Below, piece by piece: positions 28,301-59,649 of a DNA stretch of 64,000 nt (positions are counted from its first letter, which is position 1; each line of letters begins with the position of its first letter). The translations under genes were made by a program, and so were the position numbers. The DNA comes from Botryllus schlosseri (lineage: Eukaryota): assembly GCA_051294905.1 (NCBI GenBank), contig CM119381.1:16864001-16928000 (forward strand), given 5' to 3'. A model generated the notes under the pieces. It had not been told where the DNA came from. It was given only the letters and a program-made list of their open reading frames with translations, and made no database searches.

Positions 28301-31300
28301 ACAACGGTGCCATTGTGCAACAAGGCAAATCAGCGTGGATCATAATCCATAATCAGTAATCACACAGCACGACCGCGCCTAATCGTAAGCTACTCACGTA
28401 GTGATTTCGATCGTTTGATGTCGACGACCGCGGTCGCGCCCGGCCCGATGTCGTTCTCCGCCCGGCACACGTATCTTCCGCTGGATTCGGTCGGAGCGGA
28501 CTGGTCCACGTAGATGTGCTTCGCGCCGACTTCGACGCTACCGTTGGGTCTCTTCCACGAGATTACGGGCGCCGGGTTTCCGACTGCATTGCAAGTGAGT
28601 CGGTTGCCGTTTACCACGATTTCCACGCGAGGCGAGCCTGTCGAAGGATATACAATAAGCTTGATTTCGTCGGAAATACCTATAGGCGCAGAAATATCCA
28701 CATAAGTACCAGGACTGGCAATGCATTCGCGGCGCGCACAGACAGCATATGGCGGCATTTGAATCGTTTCTGCAGATAGCATATTTTCAACGCATTTATA
28801 TCATAAACAGATTCAAAACAAACACGTTTAAAACATGGCTTTTGTTTACAACATGTTTTTTTTAGCCAGTGCGTCATGAATCTTGGACTTGTGACGTCAC
28901 ATCGGATTGACATCGACAATCACAATACAAAATATAGGATAAATATCTCACTATATTTTTGACGAAAATAGCTTCCGACCCCCATCTTAAACATACCAAA
29001 AACTCATTTTCGACCAGGACACATCAGTATGCAACATCAGATCACCCATTCCGTATAGTCATCATCATCAGATCACCCACGTGCTATAGCTGATGAACCG
29101 ACGACGATTTCAAGGGTTCTGACCATTCTATATCGTATATATTGACTACCGTAATTTTCCGAATATAGTGCGCCCCCATGTATAATACGCACCCTTAAAA
29201 TGACGTGTATATTCTGGGAAAAGGCCTGTACCCATGTATAGTACGCACCCTGCATTCGCAGTGCATGAATAGCTGTGTTTTAGTACGCGATGTTGTTCTG
29301 TTTTGCGATGTCACTGTCGAACAATCATGACATAATGATCGCTAATCATAATACAATTAACGGCATTGTCTCTAAACGAGAGTAGATAGTAGCCAAAGCC
29401 TGTGAGGTCGGCGACGCGATAGTTCAGGCTAGTGACACACGACATCTTGCGCACGAGGCCTATTACAATTACAGATGCGATTGCTCAGGCCAACGGTTAT
29501 GTCGGGCGCGCCAGTCCTGTTGGAGACCCGACTGATTACGCAAGCGATTATATCTTGCGCACATGGCCTCTTGTGTATGCGATTGTCAAGGCCTGTCGGT
29601 AACGCGATGAATCGAAAAGGATTGCCGCGCACGCTTGTAGCAATCAGCGACCTGATTTCGCTCGCGTACAAACTGCAAACCAACTCAGCAAGATATCGCG
29701 TGCTTTGCAGACGACTCTCGTTAATTAGAAACACGCTTTTCGTTAATTGGCTACATGTTTCTCTATTTGGCGCCGCGTTACAGTCTATAATACGAATTAC
29801 GGGGCCCAATGGCTAGAGCTGATGCGAGATTTAAACAAACATGAAGAAAGGTGTGATTTCAAGTTTAAGATCGAGGGATTTTTTTTCAAAGCTTGCTGTA
29901 CCCATGTATAATACGCACCCCCCTATTTTAGGGCAAAAAATTGGTAAAATTTTGCGCATTATACATGGAAAATTACGGTATATCCGGTGAAAATCGACTG
30001 AAGGCTATACCACAGGTTATTTTTGGAAATATTTACACAATTATGGCATAGTTATACAAATTTGAAAGAGAAATAAAATCAAACGGCACTTTGAAACATG
30101 TTTTGAATAATGTGTTTCAAAACACCATTAGTTTTATATGCAACACTAGTCACTACCATATTTCCGTTACATGTATAAGGCGAGTCGTCTCCGAGCTAAT
30201 TACATTGCCGGCGTGGTCCGCATTCCCGCATGTATAAATACGATAACAAATACAAATACACTGGTGAAATCGATTTGATTAGCCAGATTTGAATTCGGTG
30301 GATTTACGGTAGAATTCTCGGTCGCGGGCGTTAAGTAGAAAACGTGAGGTCTGCAGAAGTAACTCCGGACAATAGCTAATCGCCTGTGACAGATGCAAAA
30401 CCGTCAAGATTTGCGACTGACGCAAAAGACTATTGGGCGCTACGATTGCGATGCAATGAAAAGATGCTTAGCTCGGGGAACATAATTATACGGGTGTTAT
30501 ATCGACCTCGCTCGTTAAATTATTGCAAGCGACTGTCCGTGCTCCAGTTGCTAAATCTAAAATATAAAGAGTTCTAAAGCTGTTGAAGAACACGTGGGAG
30601 CAGTAGTACCCGAATACTCCTAACAGATGAATTTCATCACTTTATTCATCACAGAACCTCCCGTCTCTAACGGAGTCGAGACATGCTTTTCTTCCATTCG
30701 CATATTCATTCGAACCATTCTTGATTTTGATTAGATTTTGAAAGCCGTCGAAGTTTTGTGAAAATGAACAATATTTTTCGGAGACCTCGCTATGCAAAAG
30801 GCACGCAAAGCAATGACCTTGCAGTAAAGTGTAGCCAGCCACTATAGCTTTTAACCTACTGTAAGCGTTGTGGTGACGCGATGCTTCAGTCGGGAGCAAT
30901 AAGCTACGAACGAATCCCTACAGATTTTTTGTCAGATGAATGTAAAGATTTTATGCCGGCACCGTATATAGTGACAATCTCACGACATCTCGAAACATTG
31001 ACACACTTACACAGTCGATCAACATCGACTCTTCCTTTCCATTGCCCGTGCGGAAATCCTTTATGCGCGACAATACACGTGTAACCGGCAGTTAGGTCTC
31101 GCTGCAGAAGAGGCTCGGTAGAATTTTCGTACCTTCCCGTAACGCCGGGTCGCAACTTGAGCGAGGACGTCACGTCGTACGTACCGTCGTCTAAAACCAC
31201 CTCCACGTTGTCGGATATTTGAGTTTCCTGTATTTGAGCGGTGAACAAACGATGCGTCAATATAGATTAAGGTCGTAGTCGCATTGTGCGTACTTCTGTC

Positions 31301-44546: not shown

Positions 44547-44552
44547 TTTATT
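44547..44552 (-). terminator. candidate polyadenylation signal AATAAA of the CARF-TASP1-NUDT22 transcript
   Basis: TTTATT on the + strand, 33 nt downstream of the stop codon at 44585-44587. Confidence 0.6.
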
Positions 44553-44584: not shown

Positions 44585-47500
44585 TCACTGATAACTCTTC
44601 AAAATTCCGTAAAGAGTACAAGCAGCCTTGCCGTTGGGACACATCTTACTCCATAAATCTGGATGCGTAGACTTCATATCCGTAACATCCTAAACAAAAA
44701 CGCATCACATAGAAATCCCCCAAAAGATTCAGCCACATTCGAATTGTATTGGCGAGCGCGATCATGGGCTGGAAAATGTCGCCTTGCAAAGGACACTACC
44801 AACTGGCAGAGGGGTCATGGTCAAAGTAGCCAGCGTTGCTACTCAGGTGGAAATCACGCCGTGAATTTATATCGAATTGCAAGTAGAAGTAGTGAATTAG
44901 AAGACATGTAAAAACTACTTCAAGCAAAAGCAGAAAATGAAGAACAGAAAAGTACTCAAAAAGTAGCTCTGCTCGATGGGTCGCTGATAAAAACGATACA
45001 AATCTTGCCCAAACCTACATTCTACTTAACAAAATCCAAAGTTTTAAAAGCAGCTATCCCCTAAAACACTGTTAAGTAGAAGTAGTCTAAAAACAGAATA
45101 GGAACAAAATAGGTGGCGAGATAGCGTCGTGGCATAATCCACAGCTGCAACACCAATGGGTTGCGGGTTCGAGCCCGATCGAGGTCGATTCCAGAATTCC
45201 TACCTAAGTGTTGAAGGTTTATCTAGGCTCCTCCTCGCCATCTCATCCGTGTGAGTGGTGTCTTATAAAAGCCTAGAAGTGGGCCGTGCTACAAATCTGC
45301 AGCTACGGCATAAAAATGAAGAGAATTGACCTGGTATAAATGACCATAGTAGTCGACAAGCCCCATGAATACCACAAACAGCAACAAAGGAACAAAATAG
45401 GACGTTATACATTTTTCCTCGATGTTTTCGCGGCACATATGACTCATGATATTCAATACACACGATCTGTGCATATGCATAGTGCGAATGCAGGATATGC
45501 ATCGCTGGACAAGAAGGTGCAGATATAGCCTCCCGGAAATGCCGAGTGCCAAACGGGGAAGCCACAGATACCAGTTTTACTGAGCAGGTCTTTGGTTTAA
45601 CCTAGTCGGGGGTTACGCCCACAACCTACAGATCAAGAAGCCGGACGCTCCACTATTACGCAATCGTGTCGGTGGATAACCAAAATCAAAATAACCACTT
45701 TGGTGAGTAGTAAAAGACCTGACTACCTCTGCCAACTGGAATGCTTTAGAGATACTCAAGATGACTATTACGGAGCGGAGCAACATACTTGTTCTGGAAT
45801 AAAATGAAGATTTGTCGATTCATCGGTTTCGGCGCCGCCTTTCCTATAAGATTGGAGGACCTCTGTACTTGTCAAATGGCACCTGTAGGCAAAAAAGACC
45901 GTGACATGGTTCTCGCAATTACGGCATATTGATGTTCACATAAAACTAGGGTTGTATTGACTCGACTCGAGTGGAGATTTTTTTGGTGAATCGACCCGAA
46001 TCATTTTCCTAAATACGAAAAAGAAGAAGAAGAAAAAGAATAGCAAACCTTCCCCATCATTGGTATTTCGCCTATCGATACTTGAAATAGGACGAGAAAC
46101 TACCAATAGTGAGCAAATTCAATATCATCCGAGAAGAGTTGTAAAAAAGTAGGTGGAACACGACTTAAGCTCAAAACTGAACTGTGAACACAACGAGTCT
46201 TGGTATTATGACTCGGACTCGACCCTCTGCACTGTGACTAGGATTTGACTCAATGGTGAATTGAAAATGACTCGACTCGCGTGAAAACTATACCAGTGAC
46301 TTGTATATGAGTACCTTACAACTTGGTTACAACCTGGCATAGAACTATATAGATTAGGTAACCGTCACAATGTGGTACTCACCTCATCAGAAAGTACGCC
46401 ACCGCTCTGCCGGCACTCAAATTATTTCTGACCAGTCCCATCAGCATCGGTTCGCCAATTTTTTCAATGGACACATTTACCTGAGTTAAGAAAATTCGGT
46501 CGGGCGCTTGAAACATTCGTTAATAGCAGAGGTGGTCAGCAACGAAGTACTTCTACTTTTTCGGAGTACTCAAGTAGGTTTTGTCGACTTACAATACTTA
46601 CTCACATGCTACTGTTTTTAGTCTACTTCCACTTAGACTTATCATTTTTTTACGCAAAACCACTTTATTTTTACTCTCTGCTTGCATCAATTTCACAAAC
46701 AAAATTGTAACAACTTGTCGAAACAGCGCCTGCATCACAGTAACTCAACATATTTTCTAAAATCGCGACTATTTCCAGTGTCGTTTTGCGTGCACCTTGT
46801 ATTGCATTTTCAAAGTAAGCCGCCTCCGATTAGCCGTTAAAAGTAAGTGACCCATCGACCAAATTTGTGTCTTGAAACTATTTGTACATTGAAGAAATAA
46901 ATTTTATACTGCCACTTGATAGTTTGACATGCCTTGGAAATTCTTCCTTCTGCTTTGAGATGTTTTGGAAATTTCTACTACTACTACTACAACTACTAAT
47001 TGAGTAGAAATCTACAGCGTTAGTTCTGCTTCTACTTGAGTATACCAACGTTGACTACTTTTCACCACGTCTGGTTAAAGGCCACAACCAACCTCATCAC
47101 GAATCTCCTTCACTTGCGAGTGGAAAATTTCGTGCAACGCGCCGTCACAGTCGAGTTCGTCAAAAGAAACGAAGTCGTGAATCTCCAATCCGGCCGCGGC
47201 CTGCGCAAGTTGCAAAAAAATATTCGCATATGCGTAGGAGTATTGCTACCTTAACCACTAACCGATGGTTCCGGGTGCCCGCCTGGAACGTCGAGCTGCC
47301 CGGCGCTTTCCGCAAGCCACGAATTTCTCCACTGGAAAATGGCTTTGCCGTCGTCTGTGATAACGATGCCGGCAACACCCAAAGGTTCGGCAAGGTACGC
47401 CTGCAAGTATGTGCAGTGTGCACATTGGTCAGAGGTGATCAGCAACGAATTAGTTCTACCTTTTCAGAGTACCCAAGTAAGGTTTGCCTAATTGCGCGAC

Positions 47501-48959
47501 TTACTCATACAGTCATGTTTTCACGCTATTTCTACTAGATGAGTTTTTATACTGCTCAACTTTTTACAATTTGAATTTCTAAGTGAAACTGTCACAAATG
47601 TTCACATTGGATAGGATTGTAGCGTTAGTATACCAAAGTCGCAGCCATATCATTGATGACTAAGTAAGCATGTGCCCCTACTAAAACTAAAAAATAGCCC
47701 TACTTAGAAACCCGTCGGCTGCTGCAACCATTGAACTTTGGTTAATATGCAGCGTAGGGTTCAACGATTCAATTGGAGCAGTATCATTATCAAGCTATTT
47801 TGCGAGTAGAATAGCTGCTGGCACACAAAACCACCTGCGTCTGATTATAATCCTTGGCTCCCTTGGCCATCAATTCCTCAACTTCGTCAGCCCAATTCGT
47901 CTCCATATAGTCCCTGTAAAACGTGTAAAAGTACCCTAAATCAGATTTCTACGATCAAATCGGATACGCTCGGTAATGTATAAATTCCAATATCCCGGAA
48001 AACTGTCAAGTAGAAGTAGTATAAACCATAAACGCTTGAGTAGTGCAAACAAGCAGGCAAAACCTACTCGATTATTCTGAAAATGTAGAAGTACTTCGTC
48101 ACTCACAACCTCTGCATACCTGTAACAGGTGAGTCCGACGTTGAACGTTAGCTGTGCATTACCATCGTCGGAAGTGTATCGAACCGAGTGGATACGGAAT
48201 TTCTGCGCGTTGAACAGACGCGAGTTCCGTTGTTTTCTTATTTCCCAACGCTCGGCTATGCATTTCTCAAATTCAGGATCCACCTGCCGTAAAATCGAGC
48301 GTCACAAGTCAGTTAATGTCTAGCCCGGCCTTGTAATTACTAATCCTATGCAAATAAAAGTCAAAGGATATCAACGTAAATGTACGAACATCACAGTAGT
48401 CAAAGTTGCCACTAAAGTAGAAGTAAAAGTTAACACCTTGCTTCTACTCAATTACAAGTAAAAGTAGCTTTTTCCAAGCCATGCAAGCTACTTGAAGTGA
48501 AAGTGGAAAATGAACATCTGAAAAGTAGATTTCGTCGAAAAGTCATACTTTTAGCGGGTGGTCCAGTCTGAAATTGCAGGGTGCATCCTTGCGACTAACA
48601 AATCAGCCACTTACCGTCATACAGTGGGTATTTCACTCAGTCGTTATGACAATTTCACGCATAATCGTGAGGGAAAAATATCGCATATTGCTTGCTTATC
48701 AAGTCGTAACATAGATGTGTAAGTAGCCAAAACACATAACCACTTGATGAAGAAGTGCATGTAGGCAAAACCTACTTTACCATTCCGAAAATGTATCCGC
48801 ACTTCCATACTGACTACCTCTTATATTCACATAGCAAACTGTTACCTTCCGATTAAATTCGTCGGACATGGCTACTTTGCACATTGAGAGCGGCAGACCT
48901 GACTTCAATGGAGACGCGAACATGATAGAAATCTCGGGATCAAGAGCGTTACCCTCTGA
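44585..48959 (-). CDS. NUDT22: NUDT22-like Nudix hydrolase module (8 exons)
   Basis: LDPEISIMF..GLP, RLFNAQKFRIHS, GLTCYRDYMETNW, AYLAEPLGVAGIVITDDG, GQLDVPGGHPEP, HEIFHSQVKEIRDEVN, AGRAVAYF, ETDESTNL, LWSKMCPNGKAACTLY. These collinear motifs match NUDT22 as I recall it. Confidence 0.92.
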
Positions 48960-51900
48960 CTGCAAACAAGACGAATCCGCGTCCACAAAAATAAATGATA
49001 TTTTATGGCCAGTAAGACGTACAGAACTGCCAGGATTATCAGAGCCATCAAGCATCGCTATTCCATTGATGCCGCTAACTTGTTCAGCAGGAGACAAGCT
49101 TGATAGAACCTCATCACTTTTGGCATCTTGGGATGGATGAACTGATGGTTCTTCCGAAGAAGAGACCTGGGTAAATAAGTAAAATGTCGATACAACGGAA
49201 TTGTACCAAAGCAAATCCCAATCACACCTTTGTCCAGGACCCGCCTACGGTCACCGATTTACCCGGGACTGCGTTACTGGGTAGTCGTGATAAAATGACC
49301 TGTAACAAGAAAAGTACGATATCGCGTCTGCTTCGCGGAAAATTTCTCCAGCGGATACGATTTTCACACATTATCATTTGATAGCAAGGTGCCATGCGAA
49401 CTGGCATCTCATGTTACAACAAAGACTGGGCAAAGAGACTCTTGGAGGTGCAGAGCTTCAATACACAATTGAATAACATATACATATTGAAACAAACCCG
49501 AATATTTTCGGCTGACGGTCATAAGGTATAATCGTCAATAACTAGTAGAGATTTCAAAGGAACTTAACAGTCGTATCACCAAATATGACGTCACAGGCAC
49601 TAAGTATTCAAATAATTGAGGCGAACAGATTGCTTAGGCTCAGTTTACTAAGACTACGAGCATTGATTGCAACTATTATTGTCAAATGAGGAGAGATGTT
49701 TCTTTGAGTGCTGAAATTATAGTTTCAATAATTTTTTCCAACCATGGAACCTTGCTAAGTTGTAACATAGCATCCAAAATATGTAGCACATAGCTACGCC
49801 TGTCTTTGGGTACGATGACCTCACAGCATTGTCTGAAAACTCTATGAAATTGGTATGGTCCAAAAAACACCAAATTACGTACACAGTCTAATACTCGATT
49901 CGGAATGGAATCACTCAAGAACACAATTGTAGCCAACCCCAGTTACAACGTACCAAACCAACGCAAGAATATATCATCACGCTTTGTTACCTGTGGGCTC
50001 TTGTCCGTTGTGGACATGTGACTGATGACCATGCTTGATGTAGTGTGGCCCCACACCACTTCGACTGGAAAATGAAAGAAAAAGGCTTCATCGCACAGCA
50101 GAGATTGAATTGAATGGCGGACGATTTGGAGGGGCTGTGGGCGAAAACATACAAAGAGGGCGATTTGGGAGGGTGTTGAAAAATTTATAATCAGTGGAAG
50201 TTGATAGTTGTCTCATATCTCAGCGATGCCTAATCATCGTTGAACAAGTTTGTTGCCTTCAAAAATATTTTGATAAGGGTGAGTGAGTCTGAGTGGAAAC
50301 TTGAGATTAAAACAGAGACCTGTCAGTGAACGATTTTCTGTGGTATGCAATCGGTCTGAGAAATCGAAATTAGGACCTTTGTCGTGGTTTTGGCAAAACT
50401 GACAAAGTATGAAAGTACGGTATGGAAAAAGATTGCCATACTATGTCATACTATGCTCTGGAACTTATAAGTAGAAACACCATTGGCACAGCCTGCATTC
50501 ATACTTGACACCATGTGATATTGGATGAATTACACATCTGAATTCACACCCTACTGACTCACCAACATTTCGAGGACCATCAACGCAGTGATGCAGACAC
50601 AACAGGCCGGCTTGTTTCTCACACTCTGCGTTCAACATCGGCGAGCCTAACATACAATGGAACTGACTTGTTGTTCACACTGAGCGTAGATTTTTGCAAT
50701 ATTACCGAGAAAATCTTTAACGAGAGCGTCTTGAAGAGCTTGATACGGCTGGTCGTGGTTACGAAGACGTTCCGCACAGTTTTTACTCAGCATCGTGCTT
50801 ACTAGTTGTTCCCCGCAACCTGGAATAGGACGTAAATTCGTTCATGTGTGGCAAATCGAAAACCCAAGTGCCACAGAAAAACAGCCATTCCGCCAATACT
50901 ACAAAAACTAACCTACACACTTGCAAGCTAGCGTAGGCCCGTTGATCACATTCTCATTCTGAAGATCACCAAGTTATCTCGGAAGAAACCAGGAGTAAGG
51001 TCTCCATTCGGTAAATGTTGGCACTGTTAAATCTAGTTGATGCTGCAGCAGTGTTTCCGAACCTTTTTAGCTTCGGAAACCGGTAAATATTAAAAACAAA
51101 TTTTGCGGGCCGGTGAACCTTCAAAAATCGAAATAATCCGCAATGTAAATACGACAAATACATGCAACACAAAAGATGACATTGGAAACTTCATTTTAAT
51201 GAAAATTCGCTGTTGCCTCTTTGACGCTATTGAAGTTTCTCCAAGGTCCTTTCAAAAACTTCATTTCGATTTTTCGTTTTTTTATTATAAATAACAATGA
51301 CTATTCTGCTTGGCAGATTCCATGATACCCCAAAATGTCGCTAAAATGTACTTTTAAAATAAAACGAATATTGTTTGAAACTCTTTTTAGGTTCCACAAA
51401 TAACTGGTCTTGAATGAGTTGCATGCTACTTTCGAACATCTTGGTGCAATACCTGCAGCATTGTGACGTCCGCCAAGTCCATAGTAGACCATGAATTCTG
51501 CATTACGATTTGCATGCAATTGATGCATAAAATTGTAATATATTCAGGCAGACCTGCAGGAAAGTTGACACGCTACACATACACTGCCCGTTGAGAACCT
51601 CGATCTACTGTATTGAGCTGATAAATATATCCTATTCGTTTGATTTACGGTGCGTGATATGTGAATATTTTATAATGACCGTATCACAGGGACAAGTCAT
51701 AAATAGCATTAAAACCCACCACTCGCAGTTACAGCTACTGAAGGAGAATCTCCTCTTCCCGGCTCGGCCCAACATCCACATCCATAAACAGCAGCCTGCG
51801 CATGTACAGTACATAGTTGCATCTATTGAATACGAGTAACCCGCAATTCACTTTAAAATCCTACCTGACCGACTCTACCAGGCATCTTCAAGACGATCCC

Positions 51901-54900
51901 TCCGCTCGAAACAGCAGAAGCGACGTTCCCGTTCAAATCCAACGCGACAGCGCCAACTGTGTCCAGTCTGATGATAACAACTTCGATTAAACGCGGATTC
52001 AAACAAGCCGAGTATCTCAACTACCTTTCGCGGTCCTGGCAAGCTTCCTGGTGTCGGCGATTACGCGCCAATTTCTCCAGCAGTCTCTGATGATATTTCT
52101 GCCACGACTTGAGAGCAGACTCTACACAAAATTAAATCCGAATTAGGGATTGCAACGAGTTATCTCGCAAACCAGTTCAGAACTTACCACTCACCAAATC
52201 GCCCGATTCGCACATTTTAACGCCGTGCGCTTTGGCCCAGTTTTCCGCCCCGGAGGATACCATGAAGCTGACGAATACTACAAAGTTTATCCACACGTTT
52301 CATCAGTACCAGCCATATTTAGTTTCTACCTTGGCGGAATACGTCCCAATTCTAGTCGACTTCTCCTTCTTTGTTCGGATAGAACTTTGTACGCGGCACG
52401 AACAGGATTTTTGACTTTGCTTACGCAAGCAACGGAACCGAAGTAGCTATCACATCGGTTTGCAGGATCTGAATTACAATCGGAGTAGACTGGTCGTCGA
52501 GTGGTAAAGCCAGTAAAGCTATATTTGATATGCACTACAATCTAGCGGAACTGAATTCAATAAACTCGGCCATAACCAACTGTAATACAAGTCAAAAGAA
52601 AATGACATCATGCTATCTGATTTTCAATGACCGATTGTATTCTGAATGAATTTTTCAATTCGTCAATTTCACAAACTTCCACCTTTATTACTGAGCTGCA
52701 TTCTCAATATTAAAAACGTAAGTCTTGCCGCAACAGCCCACCTTTTGATTAGCACTGAAGAGCAAGCTTAATATTTTCAACATTTATCATTAGTTAGATG
52801 ATAATAGTTAGATAGTTATGATAACCCGTAACACAATTTTAATTTAATCACCACAAAACCGTGACAATCCCAGACATACGTGTCCCGGTGTAGTCATTTC
52901 GCATACCTGAGGATGGCGAAGTATCCATCACACTTGCGTCGCATTCCACCTGACCCGACTCGGTGAGATTCGAACCGTACCCGGCATTTGTCAGTTCGCT
53001 ATCCTGCACAAGAACAATCACAATTTGCACAGGAACATATTCCAAAGTCAAATCATGTGTCAAGTAACGCAAATTTTTAAAGTGACTCGAGTCGAGTCAA
53101 GTTATCTCTAACTTTTTGATTTCGAGTCAACTCCAAGTTATCAAATCATTTTAGTTTGTTTTGTTTGGTTTCAATGTACGGATGGATACACATATTTGCA
53201 TATAGGCTATAGTCAAACTTGGTGCCACACCACTTTTAAAATTCAATTCTTACGAATGAATATATTCGCATGGTCGCAATGATATCATAATGCAGGCCTG
53301 GCAGTTAAATGCATGTCTGTTTTGTCTGCGATTTCGCTCCTGATTGAAGTAACGATATTAAAAACTTTAACGGAAATGGAATCCAGTAAAAGGGTTAGCA
53401 TTGATCATGCGGCTTTGCGAAGGAGAGTATTTGACGACTTGAAAATGGAGTCATAAATTATTACATATTTTCCATACGTCGAGTCCACGTCAAGTTAAGT
53501 CGTTTTAGTAAGTCAAATAATATCGAAAACGTGACTAGAGTCAACTTGAAATGGCAGCAATCATACTTCTAACATCTGTACAGCAAGAGCGGTCGCCTCC
53601 CCTGCCGAGACACCCTCCCTGATTTTGCGACTAACAGCAGTGCAGACCGTTTTACAAAGCTGGCTATAGCCCGGGTATCTTTCGTCAGAATGGTAGCCAG
53701 CGCCTGCAATGGTTTCAGTATAAAAATCTGCGCAAAGACGTTGAACCGAAAGGTACCTACCAACATGAATAGCTATGAATCCAACATCAATCTTTTGACA
53801 TCTTAACGCAAATAAGTATATTAACTTCACATCTGACTAATTAAAAGTAAGTATTCTAAGCCTTGTTATTGCCTTCAAAACTGAATACTGTCAAGTAGAA
53901 GTTGTAGTCTAAAATTAAAACCACTTGAGCGTACTGAGCAAGTAGCCAAAACCTGGTGCAGTATTCAAAAAGGTAGAAGTACTTGGTTACTGACCACCTC
54001 TGAAGCAGACATACCTTAGCGCGGCGAGATCGCAGTACGGTTGGGAGTTGACTTGTACGATATTCGTAACGCTAGGAGGAGACACATCTTTCACCGGCAC
54101 TTCTTCTGATGACGAAGGTTTAGGTAGGGCCGTCGCTTTACCAGAGGCGAGAAATATGTGGTTGTGAATAGTCTGGCAAATAAATTTCAAGTGTTGGACC
54201 GTTGACGAATGGGTCGTAACGATTCGTTCATTCGTTAGGGTTGGGTATAGCAATTCAAGTACTCGAATCTGCATAGAGTATTAATTTTGACGATTGGGGT
54301 ACCAAAAAATTATAGGTTCCTTATTATTTTATGAATGAAAATTGTCATTGCGATACTTTCTTGTGGCAGCGGCAGCCTTGAAACCACAATAAGAGGAAGT
54401 ATATCATTCAATGCATGCAGCAACAGGCTACAGCATTTCTGTATAGTAATGACAGACCTGTGGCGTTGTCTTATATATAGCAATGACACTGTCAGCAAAT
54501 TTGAAATGATTTACATAGAATGATTTACATAGATTATTTACTTTATTGTCGCATAAAAAAATGTATTTGGAGCAGGGTTGTAATGAGGCCCGATTTTTTG
54601 GTGACTCGAATTGACTCGAGTCATTTTTTCAAATCCCTAACATGACTCGACTCGAGTCAATTTGTGTATTGACTCGACTTGTACTCGGGTCATTGCGCAT
54701 GACTCGAACCAAGTCATTTCACTCGAGACATTTCATGGTAACTTCGAAGAACAGTAATTTAACGGTATATATTTTGGGTAATTATGAATAACACATTGAA
54801 AAAATCAGTATCGTAAGATCTACAGGATATGAAACATAGGTATTGGAAACGACGTTTGGGTCTTATATAGATTGAAGTCCATGCGGCATATCGAAGCGTT

Positions 54901-57900
54901 ACACAGGAAATGATAACCTGACAAAGCATGTAATATGTGTATGGTGTGAAATATCGAGAAGAATTGACATTCAATTCAGAATCGAATCAATCAGGTATTC
55001 GAAATTGCCCAATCCTAATTTCTACAAAATGTACCTTTGTGGTGGGAAAGAATCTCTTATTGTCGAGTTTTGGTTTTTCGTTGTCGTCCGCATGAGCGAA
55101 TAATGTATTCAAGACGTAATCGCTGATCATTGATTTCAAGCTTGGAATGTCGTATATTCCTTTGAAAAAACATCTCAATTGTCGGTCTGAAATCGGTGCT
55201 ATTTGCTGAAACGAGAAGACGTTACCGTTCCGGACGAGTTCTCGAACTTTGTTAATGACCCGTTTGTCGAGCTGCGTTGTGTTGGTCCGAGATACTATTT
55301 CGTGATTGGTATGAGAAGCAACAAGCGGAAATCGAAAATAGTGTACATCTGGAGAATAACAATGATGGATAAGCATTTAAGCAACCTAAACAAAGATGAA
55401 CTAAGTTATATTCAGCAATTTAGGAATAGTAGTGATTAGATCAGGGCTTCTTCAACTGGAGCCCATGGACTGAGTCCGCGGACTCTATGTAAAGGGTCCA
55501 TGAAGGGTCGATGTTGAAAATACAACTGCACACTATAAAATTACGTTATCCTAATTTATAAGATATGTCCCTATTTTTGACATGTCCACATAGGCGCTGA
55601 ACTCCGATTTTCCCTAGGTATGCGGTATCGATGACGTCACAAAGGGCTGACGTCATAGTGCGTCAGAATTGACAAATGAGCCGACTCGCAAGCGTTCAAT
55701 ATCACCTGTCACTTGTATATGGTGACAAAATTACGATAGTATTAAGCAGGCGCGCAGCCGGCCGGCCGCTTGCTGAATTGATTTCAAATTTACCAAGGTA
55801 GAATCAGTTTATTATGGTCAAGTGCATGCACCAATGATGATAATAGATCGATCGGATCAGCATCCTAGCGTAACGGCCTCACACGTAGCCTAATACTCGA
55901 CACTACTACGACACATCACGCTACGATAGGATTACTAGCGAACACTCCGACTACGCAGTCAATTAGCGAGCTCGCAATCTCCCGCAACATATTCGCCAAC
56001 ACGCGCGCCGACAATCAGGAAATTTCAATTACTCGGCTCGAGAACAAACGAATACGCATCTGTGGCGACGGCTAATAATCTAAAGTTACAAGAACTATTC
56101 TCACAAATGTGCGTGCTGGACTCTATATTCATTAGTCACTCTGATTGCAGGGGAGTCAGAAGTTTCGATATCAAGAGCCTGCAAGACAATTTTCTGATGT
56201 TCTGTTTTAGTATTAGCGTTAATCAAAATCAATTACGCCGCTGTCTGTTCACGATCAGTATGTATTTTAATCAATTCTGTCCATGTTCAATGTCTGAGCC
56301 AGTCCGACATCACAATCTCGGAAAACGCGGCAGTTCCGGCCGGTGCATCATATCATATTCCGACACAGCAAGTATTAGTGGAAATCAAGTACGCATGTAC
56401 GTGTACGGTGTACGCACGCGTCGCAAATGCTTGCGGACATTCGATGCCATTCAGTTTCGCGATGTCAATCTTTAATCACAATCGAGAGCCAAAGCATTCT
56501 AGGCACGAGACGCGATCGTTAGTCTAATGATGCTATATTTCGTAACAGGCCTATTGCACACACAATTGTGTAGGTAGACCAACGATGGTATCGTGTGCAG
56601 GCCAGCGATGGTATAGTGCGTACTGGGCCTATTCCCGATGCGATTCTTCAAGCCAGCGGAACGAGGCTTGATGGAGGCGCGATAAATCAGGCCAGCGACG
56701 ATCGCAGAGCGCGCGGCAATCAATGACTTCGGAATCATCTCAGCGCGAGATCGCGTTGCGTTACATCGTGCACAAACTATTCTCGCTAATTGGAAACACG
56801 CTTCTCGTTAATTGGCCGTGGCCGCGCACGACACTGATAAAATAAGACTTACGGAATTGCAACTGAATATTAACGTCAGAATGGTCATTTCAAAAGGACG
56901 GGGTTGTGCTACGCGCATGAATGTATTGCTTCTGATTTGATTAAGTGTTCAGCAGCAGTACGAAATACATTGCTTAATTCTAAATCGATCAATTCACCAG
57001 CCAGCCTAGCCGAATTCTGGGTATGCCGCATACCTAAAAAAATTCCTAGGTATGCGCGGCATACCTAGCATACCTGAGTTCAGCGCCTATGCATGTCCAT
57101 GTTATATTTTATTTACTGCGCTCACCACAGCTCAAATCGCCACTAGGACAACACGGTCACTAGTAATTTCACTGCGACTGATGAGACGGCTTGGCCGAAG
57201 TGATGACCTATTTTAATTATATATCCATCATGCAGTTGTTTAGTCATCAACTAGACCAGATGGTAATGAGCCCATGATCAGGAGTATTTGACTGTCCGCA
57301 ATATTGATCCCCGTCAACTACAGTCGTGGTTGTGCAATTCAAAAAAATTTCTCGGAATCTGATAAACTCATCGCCAGGCTTCAAGTGATTCGACTTGACT
57401 CGAGGCATTTTCTCCTAATACTGAAATGACTCGACTCGAGTCAATCTGTGTATTGCCTCGACTTGGACTCGAGTCGTTGCTCATGACTCGAACCAAGTCA
57501 TATGACATGAGACTCAGACGGTCAAGACCGACATTTCATTGTAATTTCGAAGAATAGTGAAGTAACCACACTGCTGGATTTTCCTCTATTGGTACTGGTA
57601 GGAAAATTAGCATATTGTAAATGCGAACCATTCAATATCACCAAATCGAGTTATAAAAAGTGGATTTAACAAGACTTCAACTGGAAACTGAGCAGTCAAC
57701 ACAATGACAGAACTCGGGTTATAATACCATGACTCGGACTCGATCCTCTGCTCGGCAACTTGGACTCGGACTTGAATCGGTGGTTCATTGAAAATGACTC
57801 GACTCGAGTCAAAACTTAAATAGTCAGATTGGCTTGTGACTCGGGGCCTGGAGACTTGGTTAAAACCCTTGTCATCGCATGCAACTCTAAACAAGATCAC

Positions 57901-59649
57901 ATTCACTTTGGTTTCACAAATTAGAATATTCATTCATTTAAACAAGTCTCCTTAGCTCTAGAAAGTTAGCAAATATATGGGGTCAAGGAATGCATAAAAC
58001 ACCTGACCCTGCACATCGAAGAATGCAGAAGAGAAGTCACTAAGCAGTTACCAATCACTGACAAAGTACTTTTACTTCTTTGGAGTATTCAAATGGGCTT
58101 AGGCCTACTTCCACTTCAATTGGACAGTTTTTAGCTGTTGATGCAAATACTAGGACTAGAATACATGCTTGCTATTTCTGGTTATCCTTATGTCAATGGT
58201 ACAGTAAATGGTCATCAAACTGTAAGTATCTACATTTTTAATAACTATAACTTGAAAGATCACAATGAAAGGAATAAACAGACACCTTCATATTTAACCG
58301 GTTTATCCGCATGCAGAGCTTCCAGAAGTCTATCCTTTGCATCATCCTTTGCTCCTTGTGTAACATCAGCAGGATCGACCATTGGCAAACCGAACTCGTT
58401 ATAAACTCTAGCCGTGCGAAACTGTAAATTACAAAACATAATACCGTATTCAAAATTTAGAAAGATACCGATTCTGATATATCATATCAACCTGTATGGA
58501 TGCATTGCAACTTGTTTGATTCAACTGTCTTTTCCTAGAATTCTGTGCATTGCAAGTTTGAATGAGTATTTCACAATGAGACAAGCGTACCTCAATGCAT
58601 GCAACATACTTTGTTAGCTGGTGAGGCCTCGTTACAGACCCACTTCTCTGACTTGATGACTTCGAAGGCGTGACCGAAGTATTGGATCGGGACATTTCCA
58701 TTCAGTTGCTGGAAGTAAATCGCTGTCAAAGAGACATATTTGAGTGCGAAACGGCATACAGTTTATCTGTACTGGTTGCAGTTTTTGAATGTGTGAGATG
58801 GAAACTATGAATCGATGACATGTTTTCAACTAACAGGGCATGTAAGAGGAAATTATAGGCACACGCAACTCGCACAGCCACAGGCATAGTACGAGCATGA
58901 AATATTAGAAAAAGTGGTAGAAAATTAACCGAAGGTAAAATTTTTGTAATAATGAAGAGGTGTCATGGACTTGTAAAGACGAAGTGAGTTCAGATGTCTT
59001 TACAATGAACAAGTCAAAAATTGGTGGCACTGCGTCGGGTTCACTGGTTGGACATAAGGAAAATTTGGTGTGCAGCGTTTTTTTCGGCAACCCAACAATT
59101 TGGTCAGTGAATCCCATGAATCCGGAAAAACAAGTTATTTTTGAACAACCCTACTGTGTACATCTACATGAGTACCAACCATGACCCCTGTATATTGAAG
59201 GGCTTACATCGTAGCCCTAGGCTACTGGAATCGCGGTACGTTTTGCCTGATATATCAGGTGAGCAGCGACGATTTTCCAAGTTGAAGTAATTTAATAAAA
59301 AATAATAAAAAACTAAAACATAGCGTGAGCACAGGACACCGATTCCATACAGGCATTGTAGTAATGCCCAAGTTCATTAATGATAGTCTAACAATGTTTA
59401 CAAAACAATGAAAGGCAAGCTCCAGTCACAAAATGTCGTACTTGATCTAGAGGAGCCATCCCGCTTGAAACGTTTCGATTGGCCTTTGGCATGTGACGCC
59501 GCGCAGAAAAAACTGCCACCGGTGACAGCGAGGAAGCCTTCGATCAATGTTTTTGTGCATCCGGAGAACTTTCCATAGCCGTAGCATTCGTTGGCGTCTT
59601 TATCGAAATCGATCAAATTTTTCTTCAGAAATCTTTCTGCATCATCCAT
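44585..59649 (-). CDS. predicted CaRF-like / Taspase-1 / NUDT22 triple-fusion protein, 28 exons, 1023 aa
   Basis: Exons 59442-59649, 58610-58722, 58492-58542, 58286-58421, 55226-55348, 55035-55159, 54015-54172, 53761-53801, 53567-53703, 52907-53003, 52330-52468, 52188-52267, 52025-52121, 51865-51967, 51720-51795, 50706-50819, 50563-50646, 49991-50064, 49228-49299, 49023-49166, 48846-48959, 48120-48283, 47835-47913, 47263-47400, 47093-47200, 46383-46480, 45789-45882 and 44585-44689 all join through GT-AG introns in matching phase, giving 3072 nt with no internal stop. The true N-terminus may lie further upstream. Confidence 0.72.
45113..45400 (+). mobile_element. candidate tRNA-derived SINE in the last NUDT22 intron
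   Basis: Pol III A-box-like TAGCGTCGTGG (45122-45132) and B-box GGTTCGAGCCC (45166-45176) at tRNA-like spacing, but no full cloverleaf. The 3' boundary is uncertain. Confidence 0.45.
46528..47071. mobile_element. CAGAGGTGG-family MITE, near full length
   Basis: Termini CAGAGGTGGTCAG / TTCACCACGTCTG; near-TSD GTTAATAG / GTTAAAGG. Confidence 0.6.
49222..53801 (-). CDS. TASP1: Taspase-1 (threonine aspartase 1, Ntn-hydrolase) module (12 exons)
   Basis: GFIAIHVGAGYHS, DSELTNAGYGSNLTESGQVECDASVMD, FGSVACVSKVKNPV, GRIPPSFMVSSGAENWA, autocleavage site RLD/[42 protein letters not shown] (catalytic Thr codon 51958-51960), SGCGEQLV, VVWGHTTSSM, ILSRLP..PGKSVTVGG. The unspliced frame stops at 49222-49224. 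Confidence 0.95.
54015..59649 (-). CDS. CARF: CaRF-like (calcium-responsive transcription factor) DNA-binding domain module (7 exons)
   Basis: YFGHAFEVIKSEKWVC, LNQTSCNASIQFRTARVYNEF, YFRFPLVASHTNH, LDKRVINKVRELVRNG, RFFPTTKTIHNHI are collinear with CaRF motifs recalled from memory (KATCPARIYIK, YVQLPTQQAHQYH, LHPQVAHKIQELVSQG, FFPTVNDIKNHI). This needs confirmation by profile search. Confidence 0.75.
55589..57091. mobile_element. hAT-type non-autonomous element, 1503 bp, in CARF-module intron 4
   Basis: Perfect 16-bp TIR CATAGGCGCTGAACTC / GAGTTCAGCGCCTATG; exact TSD CATGTCCA (55581-55588, 57092-57099); CCTAGGTATGC subterminal repeats. Confidence 0.92.

What the first reader, a model, noticed from the sequence alone, without database searches (positions are those of the whole stretch)
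49166..49228. Stop codon hidden in a 61-nt intron: a splice switch between Taspase alone and Taspase-NUDT22
Seen: ...TGG ACA AAG|GTG TGA...TTTTACTTATTTACCCAG|GTC TCT. Unspliced, the frame ends TKV* (677 aa). Spliced (49167-49227), it continues in frame for 347 more codons. The donor GTGTGA is weak, but similar donors are needed elsewhere here (GTGTCT 58285, GTTGAT 58491, GTTCGG 13314). There is no AATAAA after the TGA. NUDT22 has LDPE where orthologs start MDPE. Three out-of-frame ATGs precede the first in-frame Met (49055), which argues against a separate NUDT22 mRNA starting at 49166. The upstream donor at 49990 is also phase 0 and could reach 49166 directly. Alternative: a tunicate-style operon resolved by SL trans-splicing at this acceptor. 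The locus may record an operon-to-fusion transition.
Basis: partly seen in the sequence, partly recalled or inferred. Interest (0 to 1): 0.85.

Follow-up and report, generated by a model that had tools for sequence, protein, structure and literature searches.

The report
Constitutive intron joining Taspase to NUDT22
The 61-base stretch is a real short intron that RNA contigs show spliced out, joining Taspase in frame to NUDT22 in a fusion gene shared by at least five sea squirts; there is no sign that it works as a splice switch.

Summary
On the minus strand the Taspase tail exon (49299-49228) ends AAG|GTGTGA, and 61 nt later a pyrimidine-rich CAG acceptor opens an in-frame exon at 49166.

RNA-derived contigs from two studies carry the cis junction 49228|49166. 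One 797-nt contig links three Taspase exons to five linker/NUDT22 exons. Depth arithmetic shows that no contig covers the intron.

The fused ORF (CaRF-like + Taspase + NUDT22) is already annotated, as an "uncharacterized protein", in Styela, Ciona and Clavelina, and is deposited for Phallusia. In the three species with genomic loci, a phase-0 intron lies at exactly this place, 362-1301 nt long. This genome has no stand-alone Taspase or NUDT22 gene. The ancestral NUDT22 start Met is not kept at the aligned place in the five ascidians.

So this is an ordinary, apparently constitutive intron of an old ascidian fusion gene. It is not a demonstrated switch and not a recent operon-to-fusion transition. 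The "hidden stop" is generic: two of 13 introns in this gene stop after one codon.

A minor Taspase-only form, or a spliced-leader NUDT22 form, is not excluded. The raw-read runs gave no depth here.

In passing: the linker holds a Taspase-type site (xLD|G), conserved in five ascidians, which suggests a self-processing polyprotein.

The parts
49991..50064 (-). Taspase exon (...EVVWGHTTSSMVISHMSTTDKSPQ), spliced to the 72-nt exon
   Evidence: Joint 49299|49991 and joint 50064|50563 in X1 and X2 contigs; 67% identical to Styela P0001 residues 642-671
49228..49299 (-). Last Taspase-homologous exon, 72 nt, phase 0-0 (VILSRLPSNAVPGKSVTVGGSWTK); contains no ATG
   Evidence: the same tail is present in Styela, Ciona, Phallusia and Clavelina
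49167..49227 (-). The 61-nt GT..AG intron (donor GTGTGA, acceptor ...ttatttacccag), removed in RNA contigs of two studies
   Evidence: Joint 'skips 61' in X1 (depth 15.5, side 72) and X2 (depth 28.6, side 78); splice ends confirmed; no contig depth inside it (arithmetic)
49222..49224 (-). In-frame TGA, read only if the intron is retained (product would end ...SWTKV). It lies at the end of the part aligned among the ascidian Taspases, close to where human Taspase1 ends (own recollection)
   Evidence: Styela has the same arrangement, AAG|GTATGA
49023..49166 (-). Linker exon 1 (48 codons, VSSSEEPS...NPGSS); holds a 22-codon out-of-frame uORF and the first in-frame ATG at 49055
49044..49055 (-). 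M-L-D-G: candidate Taspase-type cleavage site (D|G), conserved in the linkers of five ascidians
   Evidence: Alignment and motif positions; consensus Q[I,L,V]D|GxDD from PMC3102056. Cleavage itself is inferred, not shown
48960..49022 (-). Second short intron, 63 nt, in frame and without a stop, spliced in both runs
   Evidence: Joint 'skips 63' CT..AC
48846..48959 (-). Exon where NUDT22 homology begins (A-LDPEISIMF...; Leu at about 48944-48942 where stand-alone NUDT22 has its start Met)
48120..48283 (-). NUDT22 exon (matches human NUDT22 residues 39-88)
47835..47913 (-). NUDT22 exon
47263..47400 (-). NUDT22 exon with ...DVPGGHPEP (matches human NUDT22 residues 116-160, E = 6.5e-9)
47093..47200 (-). 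NUDT22 exon (...EIFHSQVKEIRDE)
46383..46480 (-). NUDT22 exon (placed by homology and GT-AG ends; outside the stretch on which reads were laid)
45789..45882 (-). NUDT22 exon (placed by homology and GT-AG ends)
44585..44689 (-). Last exon, with stop TGA at 44587-44585; AATAAA follows at 44552-44547
   Evidence: the length of X2 contig 7 (1170 nt) fits an end shortly after this signal (inference)

Best explanation
The 61-nt stretch is an ordinary short phase-0 intron. On the present evidence it is constitutively removed. It sits at the seam of an old ascidian fusion gene whose single ORF encodes a CaRF-like (ALS2CR8) domain, a Taspase1-type threonine aspartase and NUDT22.

**Shown.**
- Splicing joins ...GGSWTK to VSSSEE..., and the frame runs on for 347 codons to the stop at 44585.
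- RNA contigs carry this junction.
- The same fused ORF, with an intron at the same codon boundary, exists in Styela, Ciona and Clavelina.
- This genome has no other Taspase or NUDT22 copy.

**Inferred.**
- NUDT22 is made only as part of this fusion, because its ancestral start codon is gone.
- The TGA right after the donor is either a relic of the former Taspase stop or a chance by-product of a GTRTGA donor. It is read only in rare unspliced molecules, which nonsense-mediated decay would be expected to remove.
- After translation, the Taspase domain probably cuts the conserved xLD|G site in the linker and releases NUDT22.
For: 1. **The cis junction is present in RNA.**
   - The cis junction 49228|49166 is present in contigs of two independent studies. 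Spliced, mostly GT..AG joints recur along the gene, which shows these contigs are cDNA-derived.
   - X1 contig 2 (797 nt) runs uninterrupted through eight exons, from 47336-47399 up to 50563-50647. It therefore links Taspase exons to NUDT22 exons.
2. **No retention is seen.**
   - Bin 49067-49263 has depth 10.7 in X1 and 19.7 in X2.
   - These equal 15.5 x 136/197 and 28.6 x 136/197, which is the spliced contig alone over the 136 exonic bases of the bin.
3. **The fused ORF exists in other ascidians.**
   - Styela XP_039248440 is 1059 aa, with ALS2CR8 (2.8e-18) and Asparaginase_2 (1.5e-53) plus a NUDT22 part.
   - Ciona LOC100178578, Clavelina LOC143447380 and a Phallusia database entry have the same architecture.
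   - An intronless 2217-nt metatranscriptome contig encodes a 701-aa Taspase-NUDT22 ORF.
4. **The intron position is conserved.** It lies after ...W(I/T)K in phase 0 in Styela (491 nt), Ciona (362 nt) and Clavelina (1301 nt).
5. **The gene is single-copy.** All NUDT22 hits and all close Taspase hits in the 495.5-Mb genome fall in this locus.
6. **The intron is typical for the gene.** Other introns are 57, 59, 62, 63 and 69 nt, and the donors are varied.
7. **No start is conserved.** No Met is conserved at the ancestral NUDT22 start, and no in-frame Met is conserved in the linker.
Against: - The RNA evidence is from assembled contigs, which drop rare variants and clip short tips. A minority of retained-intron molecules, or of 16-nt spliced-leader forms, would not show.
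- The two raw-read runs gave zero depth on these exons, so no ratios could be measured.
- In X2 the NUDT22-side contig is deeper (28.6) than the 49299|49991 junction contig (13.9) and the Taspase contig (9.24). In X1 the figures are 15.5 against 10.6 and 9.0. This may be 3' bias, but it could also reflect extra NUDT22-only transcripts.
- The boundary (stop, 55 nt, pyrimidine tract and AG, no AATAAA) looks like a Ciona-type operon boundary (PMC1488885). In Ciona, acceptors paired with weak donors can be used both in cis and in trans (PMC11155486).
Confidence: 0.8

Rival explanations
1. Regulated splice switch. The weak donor lets the cell choose between intron retention, which gives CaRF-Taspase alone ending ...TKV at the TGA, and splicing, which gives Taspase-NUDT22.
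For: - The TGA lies one codon after the donor, at the end of the Taspase-homologous part.
- Styela has the same AAG|GTATGA arrangement.
- The intron length is not a multiple of three.
Against: - No contig depth lies inside the intron in two RNA data sets.
- No Taspase-only isoform appears among the RefSeq isoforms or clusters of three ascidians.
- The immediate stop is absent in Ciona (+28 codons) and Clavelina (+13).
- Stops just after donors occur at other introns of this gene.
- There is no poly(A) signal downstream, so the retained form would carry nine downstream junctions and should be degraded by nonsense-mediated decay (inference).
Confidence: 0.08
2. Ciona-type operon used alongside the fusion. 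A share of pre-mRNAs is resolved at the 49167 AG, with poly(A) added to a Taspase mRNA and a spliced leader added at 49166. This would give a separate NUDT22 mRNA translated from ATG 49055 or a later Met.
For: - The organism is an ascidian.
- Ciona operons have no intercistronic DNA and mostly no AATAAA (PMC1488885).
- Trans-splicing can use an acceptor that has a weak paired donor (PMC11155486).
- The NUDT22 side is 1.5-3 times deeper than the Taspase side.
- Other first-stage notes propose many operons in this genome (these are untested).
Against: - In both runs the contig runs straight through 49166 into the Taspase tail exon, so the cis form is the main path in the assembly graph.
- The ORF is continuous across the seam in five ascidians and one metatranscriptome mRNA.
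- The ancestral NUDT22 Met is lost.
- The first in-frame ATG follows a three-ATG uORF and is not conserved.
- In the other ascidians the seam intron is 362-1301 nt, unlike operon boundaries.
Confidence: 0.12
3. The fused contigs are assembly chimeras or rare read-through products of two independent neighbouring genes.
For: The tool itself warns that a contig across two genes does not prove a single transcript.
Against: - The junction k-mers 49228|49166 can only come from spliced molecules.
- The junction was found in two studies, at the same depth as the flanking exons.
- Orthologous fused ORFs exist in four other ascidians, among them a Phallusia database entry, and as an intronless metatranscriptome contig.
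- There is no stand-alone copy in the genome.
Confidence: 0.02

Closest known systems
RefSeq/UniProt 'uncharacterized protein' LOC100178578 (Ciona intestinalis), LOC120326249 (Styela clava), LOC143447380 (Clavelina lepadiformis) and CAB3262196 (Phallusia mammillata)
   Same: - Same order of domains: ALS2CR8/CaRF-like, then Asparaginase_2/Taspase, then NUDT22.
- Same seam, ...G(T/S)W(I/T)K|V..., with a phase-0 intron there.
- 49-58% identity to the window's product over the C-terminal 366-392 aligned residues.
   Different: - The seam intron is 61 nt here, against 362-1301 nt in the others.
- The linker sequence is poorly conserved apart from the xLD|G motif.
- Styela carries a second tandem linker+NUDT22 cassette.
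- No paper in the searchable library mentions Taspase together with NUDT22, or either one together with Ciona or ascidians.
Human Taspase1 (TASP1, threonine aspartase 1)
   Same: - Asparaginase_2 fold (PF01112).
- The autoproteolysis and nucleophile motif LD|TVGAV is present.
- The homologous C-terminal tail ends within a few residues of the seam (own recollection of the human sequence, not tool-checked).
   Different: - The human protein is stand-alone, about 420 aa, with its own stop.
- Here the protein is extended at the N-terminus by a CaRF-like domain and at the C-terminus by NUDT22.
Human NUDT22 (UDP-glucose/galactose pyrophosphatase; PDB 5LF9)
   Same: Exon-level matches to human residues 39-88 and 116-160, including DVPGGHPEP. 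Vertebrate NUDT22 proteins are about 34-43% identical to the Styela NUDT22 part.
   Different: - Vertebrate NUDT22 is a stand-alone protein of about 290-340 aa that starts at MDPE.
- Here there is Leu at that place, no promoter or start of its own was found, and translation runs in from the Taspase ORF.
Ciona-type SL-resolved operons without intercistronic DNA (Satou et al. 2006, PMC1488885)
   Same: - Two formerly separate genes lie head to tail.
- There are 55 nt between the upstream stop and a strong acceptor.
- There is no AATAAA.
- The lineage does SL trans-splicing.
   Different: - A cis donor sits 3 nt before the stop.
- The cis junction is what the RNA contigs show.
- The ORF is continuous, and the downstream part has lost its start codon.
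Conjoined / read-through fusion transcripts of neighbouring genes in vertebrates
   Same: A splice from near the end of the upstream gene into the downstream gene skips the stop and the 3' end (own knowledge of the phenomenon).
   Different: - Those are usually minor by-products of two genes that also work separately.
- Here the fusion is the only copy, the main form seen, and conserved across ascidian orders.

Membership tests
Ascidian CaRF-Taspase-NUDT22 fusion gene (orthologues of Ciona LOC100178578) | One collinear ORF with ALS2CR8, Asparaginase_2 and NUDT22 parts | tested here: met
   The window is collinear with Styela P0001 from 59637 to 44600. Exon-level Pfam and PDB hits support each part. 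The orthologues' domains were confirmed.
Ascidian CaRF-Taspase-NUDT22 fusion gene (orthologues of Ciona LOC100178578) | Phase-0 intron at the seam after ...W(I/T)K | tested here: met
   Window intron 49227-49167. Styela L001:14093-14583, Ciona L002:11224-11585 and Clavelina L003:9373-10673.
Ascidian CaRF-Taspase-NUDT22 fusion gene (orthologues of Ciona LOC100178578) | mRNA that crosses the seam in frame | tested here: met
   Contigs of X1 and X2. The spliced translation is open to the stop at 44585.
Taspase1 / Asparaginase_2 (PF01112) | Family profile match, and the D|T autoproteolysis site with its Thr nucleophile | tested here: met
   The exon 51966-51865 hits PF01112 at 3.8e-11. RLD-TVGAVALD is present. 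Enzyme activity is not testable here.
NUDT22 | Sequence match to solved human NUDT22, including the GGHPEP segment | tested here: met
   E = 6.5e-9 to 5LF9 residues 116-160, and a weak match to residues 39-88.
NUDT22 | Own initiator Met at the conserved N-terminus (MDPE / MDQLDED) | tested here: not met
   Leu in the window. In the alignment none of the five ascidians keeps a Met at that place (Ile in Styela, Leu in Ciona and Clavelina, by eye).
SL-resolved operon (Ciona type) | Same-strand genes with under 100 nt between the upstream stop and the downstream acceptor, and no AATAAA | tested here: met
   TGA at 49224-49222, acceptor AG at 49168-49167, and no AATAAA or ATTAAA. Criteria are from PMC1488885 and PMC11155486.
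SL-resolved operon (Ciona type) | Downstream cistron carries the spliced leader at that acceptor; upstream mRNA is polyadenylated there | tested here: inconclusive
   Contigs run through the site in cis.
SL-resolved operon (Ciona type) | Downstream cistron has its own usable start codon | tested here: not met
   The ancestral Met is lost. The first in-frame ATG (49055) lies behind a three-ATG uORF and is not conserved.
Regulated intron retention (splice switch) | Both spliced and retained forms are detectable | tested here: not met
   There is zero contig depth inside the intron in X1 and X2 (arithmetic). Sensitivity is limited to what the contigs keep.
Regulated intron retention (splice switch) | The truncating stop at the donor is conserved among orthologues | tested here: not met
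   It is shared with Styela only. Ciona reads on for 28 codons and Clavelina for 13.

The most novel reading that the evidence does not exclude
In ascidians NUDT22 is made only as the tail of a cellular self-processing polyprotein. Splicing of the seam intron is obligatory. The Taspase domain of the same protein then cuts the conserved [Q/M/P][L/M/V]D|G site, which lies 7-13 residues before the ancestral NUDT22 N-terminus, and releases free NUDT22. The operon-like seam (weak donor, no poly(A) signal) may additionally allow minor Taspase-only or SL-NUDT22 outputs, as a relic of an ancestral operon.
Probability: 0.3. Interest if true: 0.8.

Novelty: new member of a known kind. Interest (0 to 1): 0.42.

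Why it matters
For the finding as posed, the result is mostly a clarification. The "stop hidden in an intron" is what any unspliced intron gives, and the RNA evidence says this intron is simply removed.

What remains of interest is the gene it belongs to.
- An animal lineage has welded a site-specific protease (Taspase) to a nucleotide-sugar hydrolase (NUDT22).
- It has kept that arrangement across ascidian orders and has lost the separate genes.
- The linker retains a Taspase-type cleavage motif.
- The fusion is annotated only as "uncharacterized", and I found no paper on it.

If the polyprotein idea holds, it would be a rare cellular example of the strategy viruses use. It would also give a natural in-cis substrate for studying Taspase.

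The seam also looks like a fossil operon boundary. That makes the locus a useful test case for how operons in trans-splicing chordates can become fusion genes.

Tried and rejected
- **Raw-read runs.** X16 and X20 were laid on 46900-52800 and gave no depth on the exons; only an intronic repeat was covered.
- **Search for transcript-derived protein fragments across the seam.** The query P0001:640-900 found nothing.
- **PDB and Pfam searches with short exons.** The 24-aa tail exon, the 48-aa linker exon and the 38-aa exon gave no hits, because they are too short or not conserved.
- **Complex prediction.** I ran the Clavelina Taspase alpha and beta parts with a 40-residue linker peptide. The verdict was 'no answer' (score 0.00, partner pLDDT under 30). 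This is no evidence either way.
- **Spurious hits.** P0003, P0004, P0005 and P0007 from the exon search are unrelated repeat proteins (P0003 and P0004 confirmed by Pfam: subtilase/cadherin and WD40) and were dropped.
- **Exon skipping.** I considered a splice from donor 49990 directly to 49166. It is not among the listed joints, though five joints were not shown.
- **A second NUDT22 copy downstream, as in Styela.** None was found in the window or elsewhere in the genome.
- **Spliced protein as a query.** Orthologue ids were used instead.
Full report
**1. What is in the sequence**

The gene lies on the minus strand. The exon 49299-49228 is 72 nt and begins and ends in phase 0. It reads VILSRLPSNAVPGKSVTVGGSWTK.

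It is followed by GTG TGA, with the donor GT at 49227-49226 and the stop at 49224-49222. Sixty-one bases after the exon end, the tract ttttacttatttacccag closes at 49167. The next exon opens at 49166 with GTC TCT (V S S S E E ...).

- There is no AATAAA or ATTAAA from 49221 down to 46669.
- The three ATGs at 49126, 49114 and 49066 share one out-of-frame uORF that ends just before the first in-frame ATG at 49055.
- The 72-nt exon holds no ATG.

The frame after the junction runs for 347 codons to TGA at 44587-44585, and AATAAA follows at 44552.

**2. RNA evidence**

I had one call to lay reads.

The two raw-read RNA runs (X16, X20; 6% and 13% sampled) gave no depth on these exons, so no read counts exist.

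The two contig sets (X1 from a 2015 study, X2 from a 2021 study) are labelled 'RNA?'. They carry 14 or more joints, twelve of which I confirmed to have exact CT..AC ends on the plus strand, which is GT..AG on the minus strand. They are therefore cDNA-derived.

Both sets contain the joint 49228|49166 ('skips 61'):
- In X1 it lies in a 797-nt contig of depth 15.5. By its piece coordinates and joint list, this contig runs 47336-47399 | 47835-47913 | 48120-48283 | 48846-48959 | 49023-49166 | 49228-49299 | 49991-50064 | 50563-50647. That is five linker/NUDT22 exons joined to three Taspase exons.
- In X2 the joint lies in an 1170-nt contig of depth 28.6. This contig starts just above the 72-nt exon. 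By its length, it runs to about the poly(A) signal of NUDT22.

It is 63 nt, in frame and without a stop, and it is also spliced in both runs.

Retention can be bounded from the depth table. The bin 49067-49263 holds 136 exonic and 61 intronic bases. The observed mean depths are 10.7 (X1) and 19.7 (X2). These equal 15.5 x 136/197 and 28.6 x 136/197. Nothing but the spliced contig lies there. The same holds for the 63-nt intron in the neighbouring bin.

Contigs drop rare variants and short tips. This therefore excludes a major retained form, but not a minor one, and not a 16-nt spliced leader.

**3. What the gene is**

Identity of the parts:
- Exons match Asparaginase_2 (PF01112, 3.8e-11) and ALS2CR8/CaRF.
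- Exons also match human NUDT22 (5LF9) at residues 116-160 (6.5e-9) and 39-88.

Orthologues:
- A search of 1.84 billion representatives with the 54-aa NUDT22 exon found a 1059-aa protein that matches at residues 789-842. This is Styela clava LOC120326249, with ALS2CR8 + Asparaginase_2 followed by NUDT22.
- The same fused protein is annotated in Ciona intestinalis (LOC100178578; three isoforms of 1005, 1001 and 791 aa) and in Clavelina lepadiformis (LOC143447380; 1040, 1011 and 839 aa).
- It is also deposited for Phallusia mammillata (CAB3262196, 769 aa).
- A 2217-nt intronless contig of a JGI metatranscriptome encodes a 701-aa Taspase-NUDT22 ORF at 38% identity.

The window is collinear with the Styela protein from 59637 to 44600. 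Its C-terminal 392 aligned residues are 58% identical to Styela, 53% to Ciona and Phallusia, and 49% to Clavelina. The window therefore comes from an ascidian, nearest to Styela among those compared.

In its 495.5-Mb genome, all NUDT22 hits and all close Taspase hits fall in this one locus. All vertebrate NUDT22 hits are stand-alone proteins of about 290-410 aa.

**4. The seam compared across species**

All five ascidian proteins read ...GKSV(T/S)V(G/S)G(S/T)W(T/I)K|V....

In the three genomic loci I could fetch, a phase-0 intron sits at exactly that K|V boundary:

| Species | Donor | Intron length | Read-through |
|---|---|---|---|
| Window | AAG\|GTGTGA | 61 nt | V, then stop |
| Styela | AAG\|GTATGA | 491 nt | V, then stop |
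| Ciona | AAG\|GTTTAC | 362 nt | 28 codons, then stop |
| Clavelina | AAA\|GTAAGT | 1301 nt | 13 codons, then stop |

The intron position is old. Its small size here is a feature of this species, and the immediate TGA is shared only with Styela.

As an internal control, I read through all 13 introns of the 3' half of this gene. Twelve of them meet an in-frame stop within the intron, after 1 to 61 codons; the in-frame 63-nt intron holds none. Two stop after a single codon and four within three codons. A 'hidden stop' is thus what introns normally contain.

What is particular about this one is only its place. It lies right where the part aligned among the ascidian Taspases stops, close to where I recall the human protein ending.

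The donor GTGTGA is not unusually weak for this gene, whose RNA-confirmed donors include GTGGTT, GTTAGT, GTAACA and GTACGT. The intron's length is in the gene's short class of 57-69 nt.

**5. Reading**

The simplest account is a constitutive intron of a conserved fusion gene (confidence about 0.8).

*The proposed switch lacks support.*
- No retained form is seen.
- No Taspase-only isoform appears among the annotated isoforms of three species.
- The stop is not conserved beyond Styela.
- A retained form would carry a premature stop upstream of nine junctions with no poly(A) signal near it, so nonsense-mediated decay is expected (inference).

*The operon alternative deserved attention.*
- Ascidians trans-splice.
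- Ciona operons have directly abutting cistrons and usually no AATAAA (PMC1488885).
- Acceptors with weak paired donors can be spliced in cis and in trans (PMC11155486).
- The NUDT22 side is 1.5-3 times deeper than the Taspase side.

*Against the operon as the main mode.*
- The contigs pass through 49166 in cis in both studies.
- The ORF is continuous in every species.
- The ancestral NUDT22 Met is replaced: Leu in the window, and no Met at the aligned place in the other ascidians.
- The first in-frame ATG is neither conserved nor well placed.

I keep a minor SL-NUDT22 output at about 0.12.

An origin of the fusion from an operon is plausible but untested. In any case it happened before these ascidian lineages split, so the locus is not a transition caught in the act.

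**6. How the fused product may work (inferred)**

The linker is poorly conserved, except for a short motif lying 7-13 residues before the ancestral NUDT22 N-terminus:

| Species | Linker motif |
|---|---|
| Window | AMLD\|GSDN |
| Styela | IPLD\|GNMDD |
| Ciona | MQMD\|GNYD |
| Phallusia | GQLD\|GNYE |
| Clavelina | SQVD\|GANDD |

This resembles the Taspase1 site Q[I,L,V]D|GxDD (PMC3102056). The Taspase nucleophile motif LD|TVGAV is intact. The fusion could therefore be a self-processing polyprotein that releases NUDT22.

Cautions:
- The divergent metatranscriptome fusion lacks the motif.
- P3 is not Q in the window or in Styela.
- A structure-based test gave no answer.

I put this reading at about 0.3. 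Earlier first-stage notes on this window raised the same idea. The conservation across four other species is what I add.

**7. Novelty and score**

- The fused ORF is already in RefSeq for related species as 'uncharacterized protein'.
- I found no paper that mentions Taspase with NUDT22, or either with Ciona or ascidians.
- The window's gene is a new member of that annotated but undescribed family.
- The specific claim of a splice switch is not borne out.
- Interest for this finding is moderate. The gene itself deserves the bench tests listed under next steps.

Noticed in passing
window 49044-49055 (-); orthologues P0001 ~742-748, P0017 ~701-707, P0013 ~463-469, P0024 ~731-737: A Taspase-type cleavage motif (xLD|G followed by acidic or polar residues) is the only conserved element of the linker in five ascidians. 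It lies 7-13 residues before the ancestral NUDT22 N-terminus. This suggests a self-processing polyprotein. The motif is absent from the divergent metatranscriptome fusion P0026.
   Followed up: partly
window 48960-49022 (-): A 63-nt intron that is in frame and free of stops. It is spliced in both RNA contig sets. Retaining it would add 21 residues to the linker without breaking the frame.
   Followed up: partly
window 49450-49600 and 49844-49877: A very high-copy repeat lies inside the 691-nt intron. Contig depth there is about 10,000 in X1 and 4,000 in X2, with many loose ends. It is the only part of the stretch covered by the raw RNA reads.
   Followed up: no
window 46527-46633, 47430-47536, 48050-48113, 48758-48821 (also 54601-54729/57385-57513 and 46231-46289/57758-57816): Copies of short interspersed elements, in both orientations, sit in many introns of this gene. 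The depth of about 1950 in the bin 48082-48278 in X1 probably comes from the copy at 48050-48113.
   Followed up: partly
window 49299 region; X2 contigs: In X2 the contig depth steps from 28.6 (NUDT22 side, through the 72-nt exon) to 13.9 (junction 49299|49991) and 9.24 (Taspase exons), and the contig breaks 6 nt above 49299. The cause could be 3' bias, an extra transcript start, or a spliced-leader site at the 49299 acceptor. It is unresolved.
   Followed up: no
L001 (Styela clava) 24210-29241: Styela has a second tandem cassette of linker exon plus NUDT22 exons, 58-89% identical to the first, downstream within the same gene range. Isoform X2 ends in sequence closer to that cassette.
   Followed up: partly
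P0006 (618 aa, source not looked up): A protein made of two NUDT22 units in tandem. It is a different kind of NUDT22 fusion, in an unidentified organism.
   Followed up: no
window 54990-55376 and 59431-59649 (-): The N-terminal exons of the same ORF match ALS2CR8/CaRF. Shorter isoforms in Ciona, Clavelina and Phallusia start inside or after this domain, which points to internal starts or internal trans-splice sites in the gene.
   Followed up: partly
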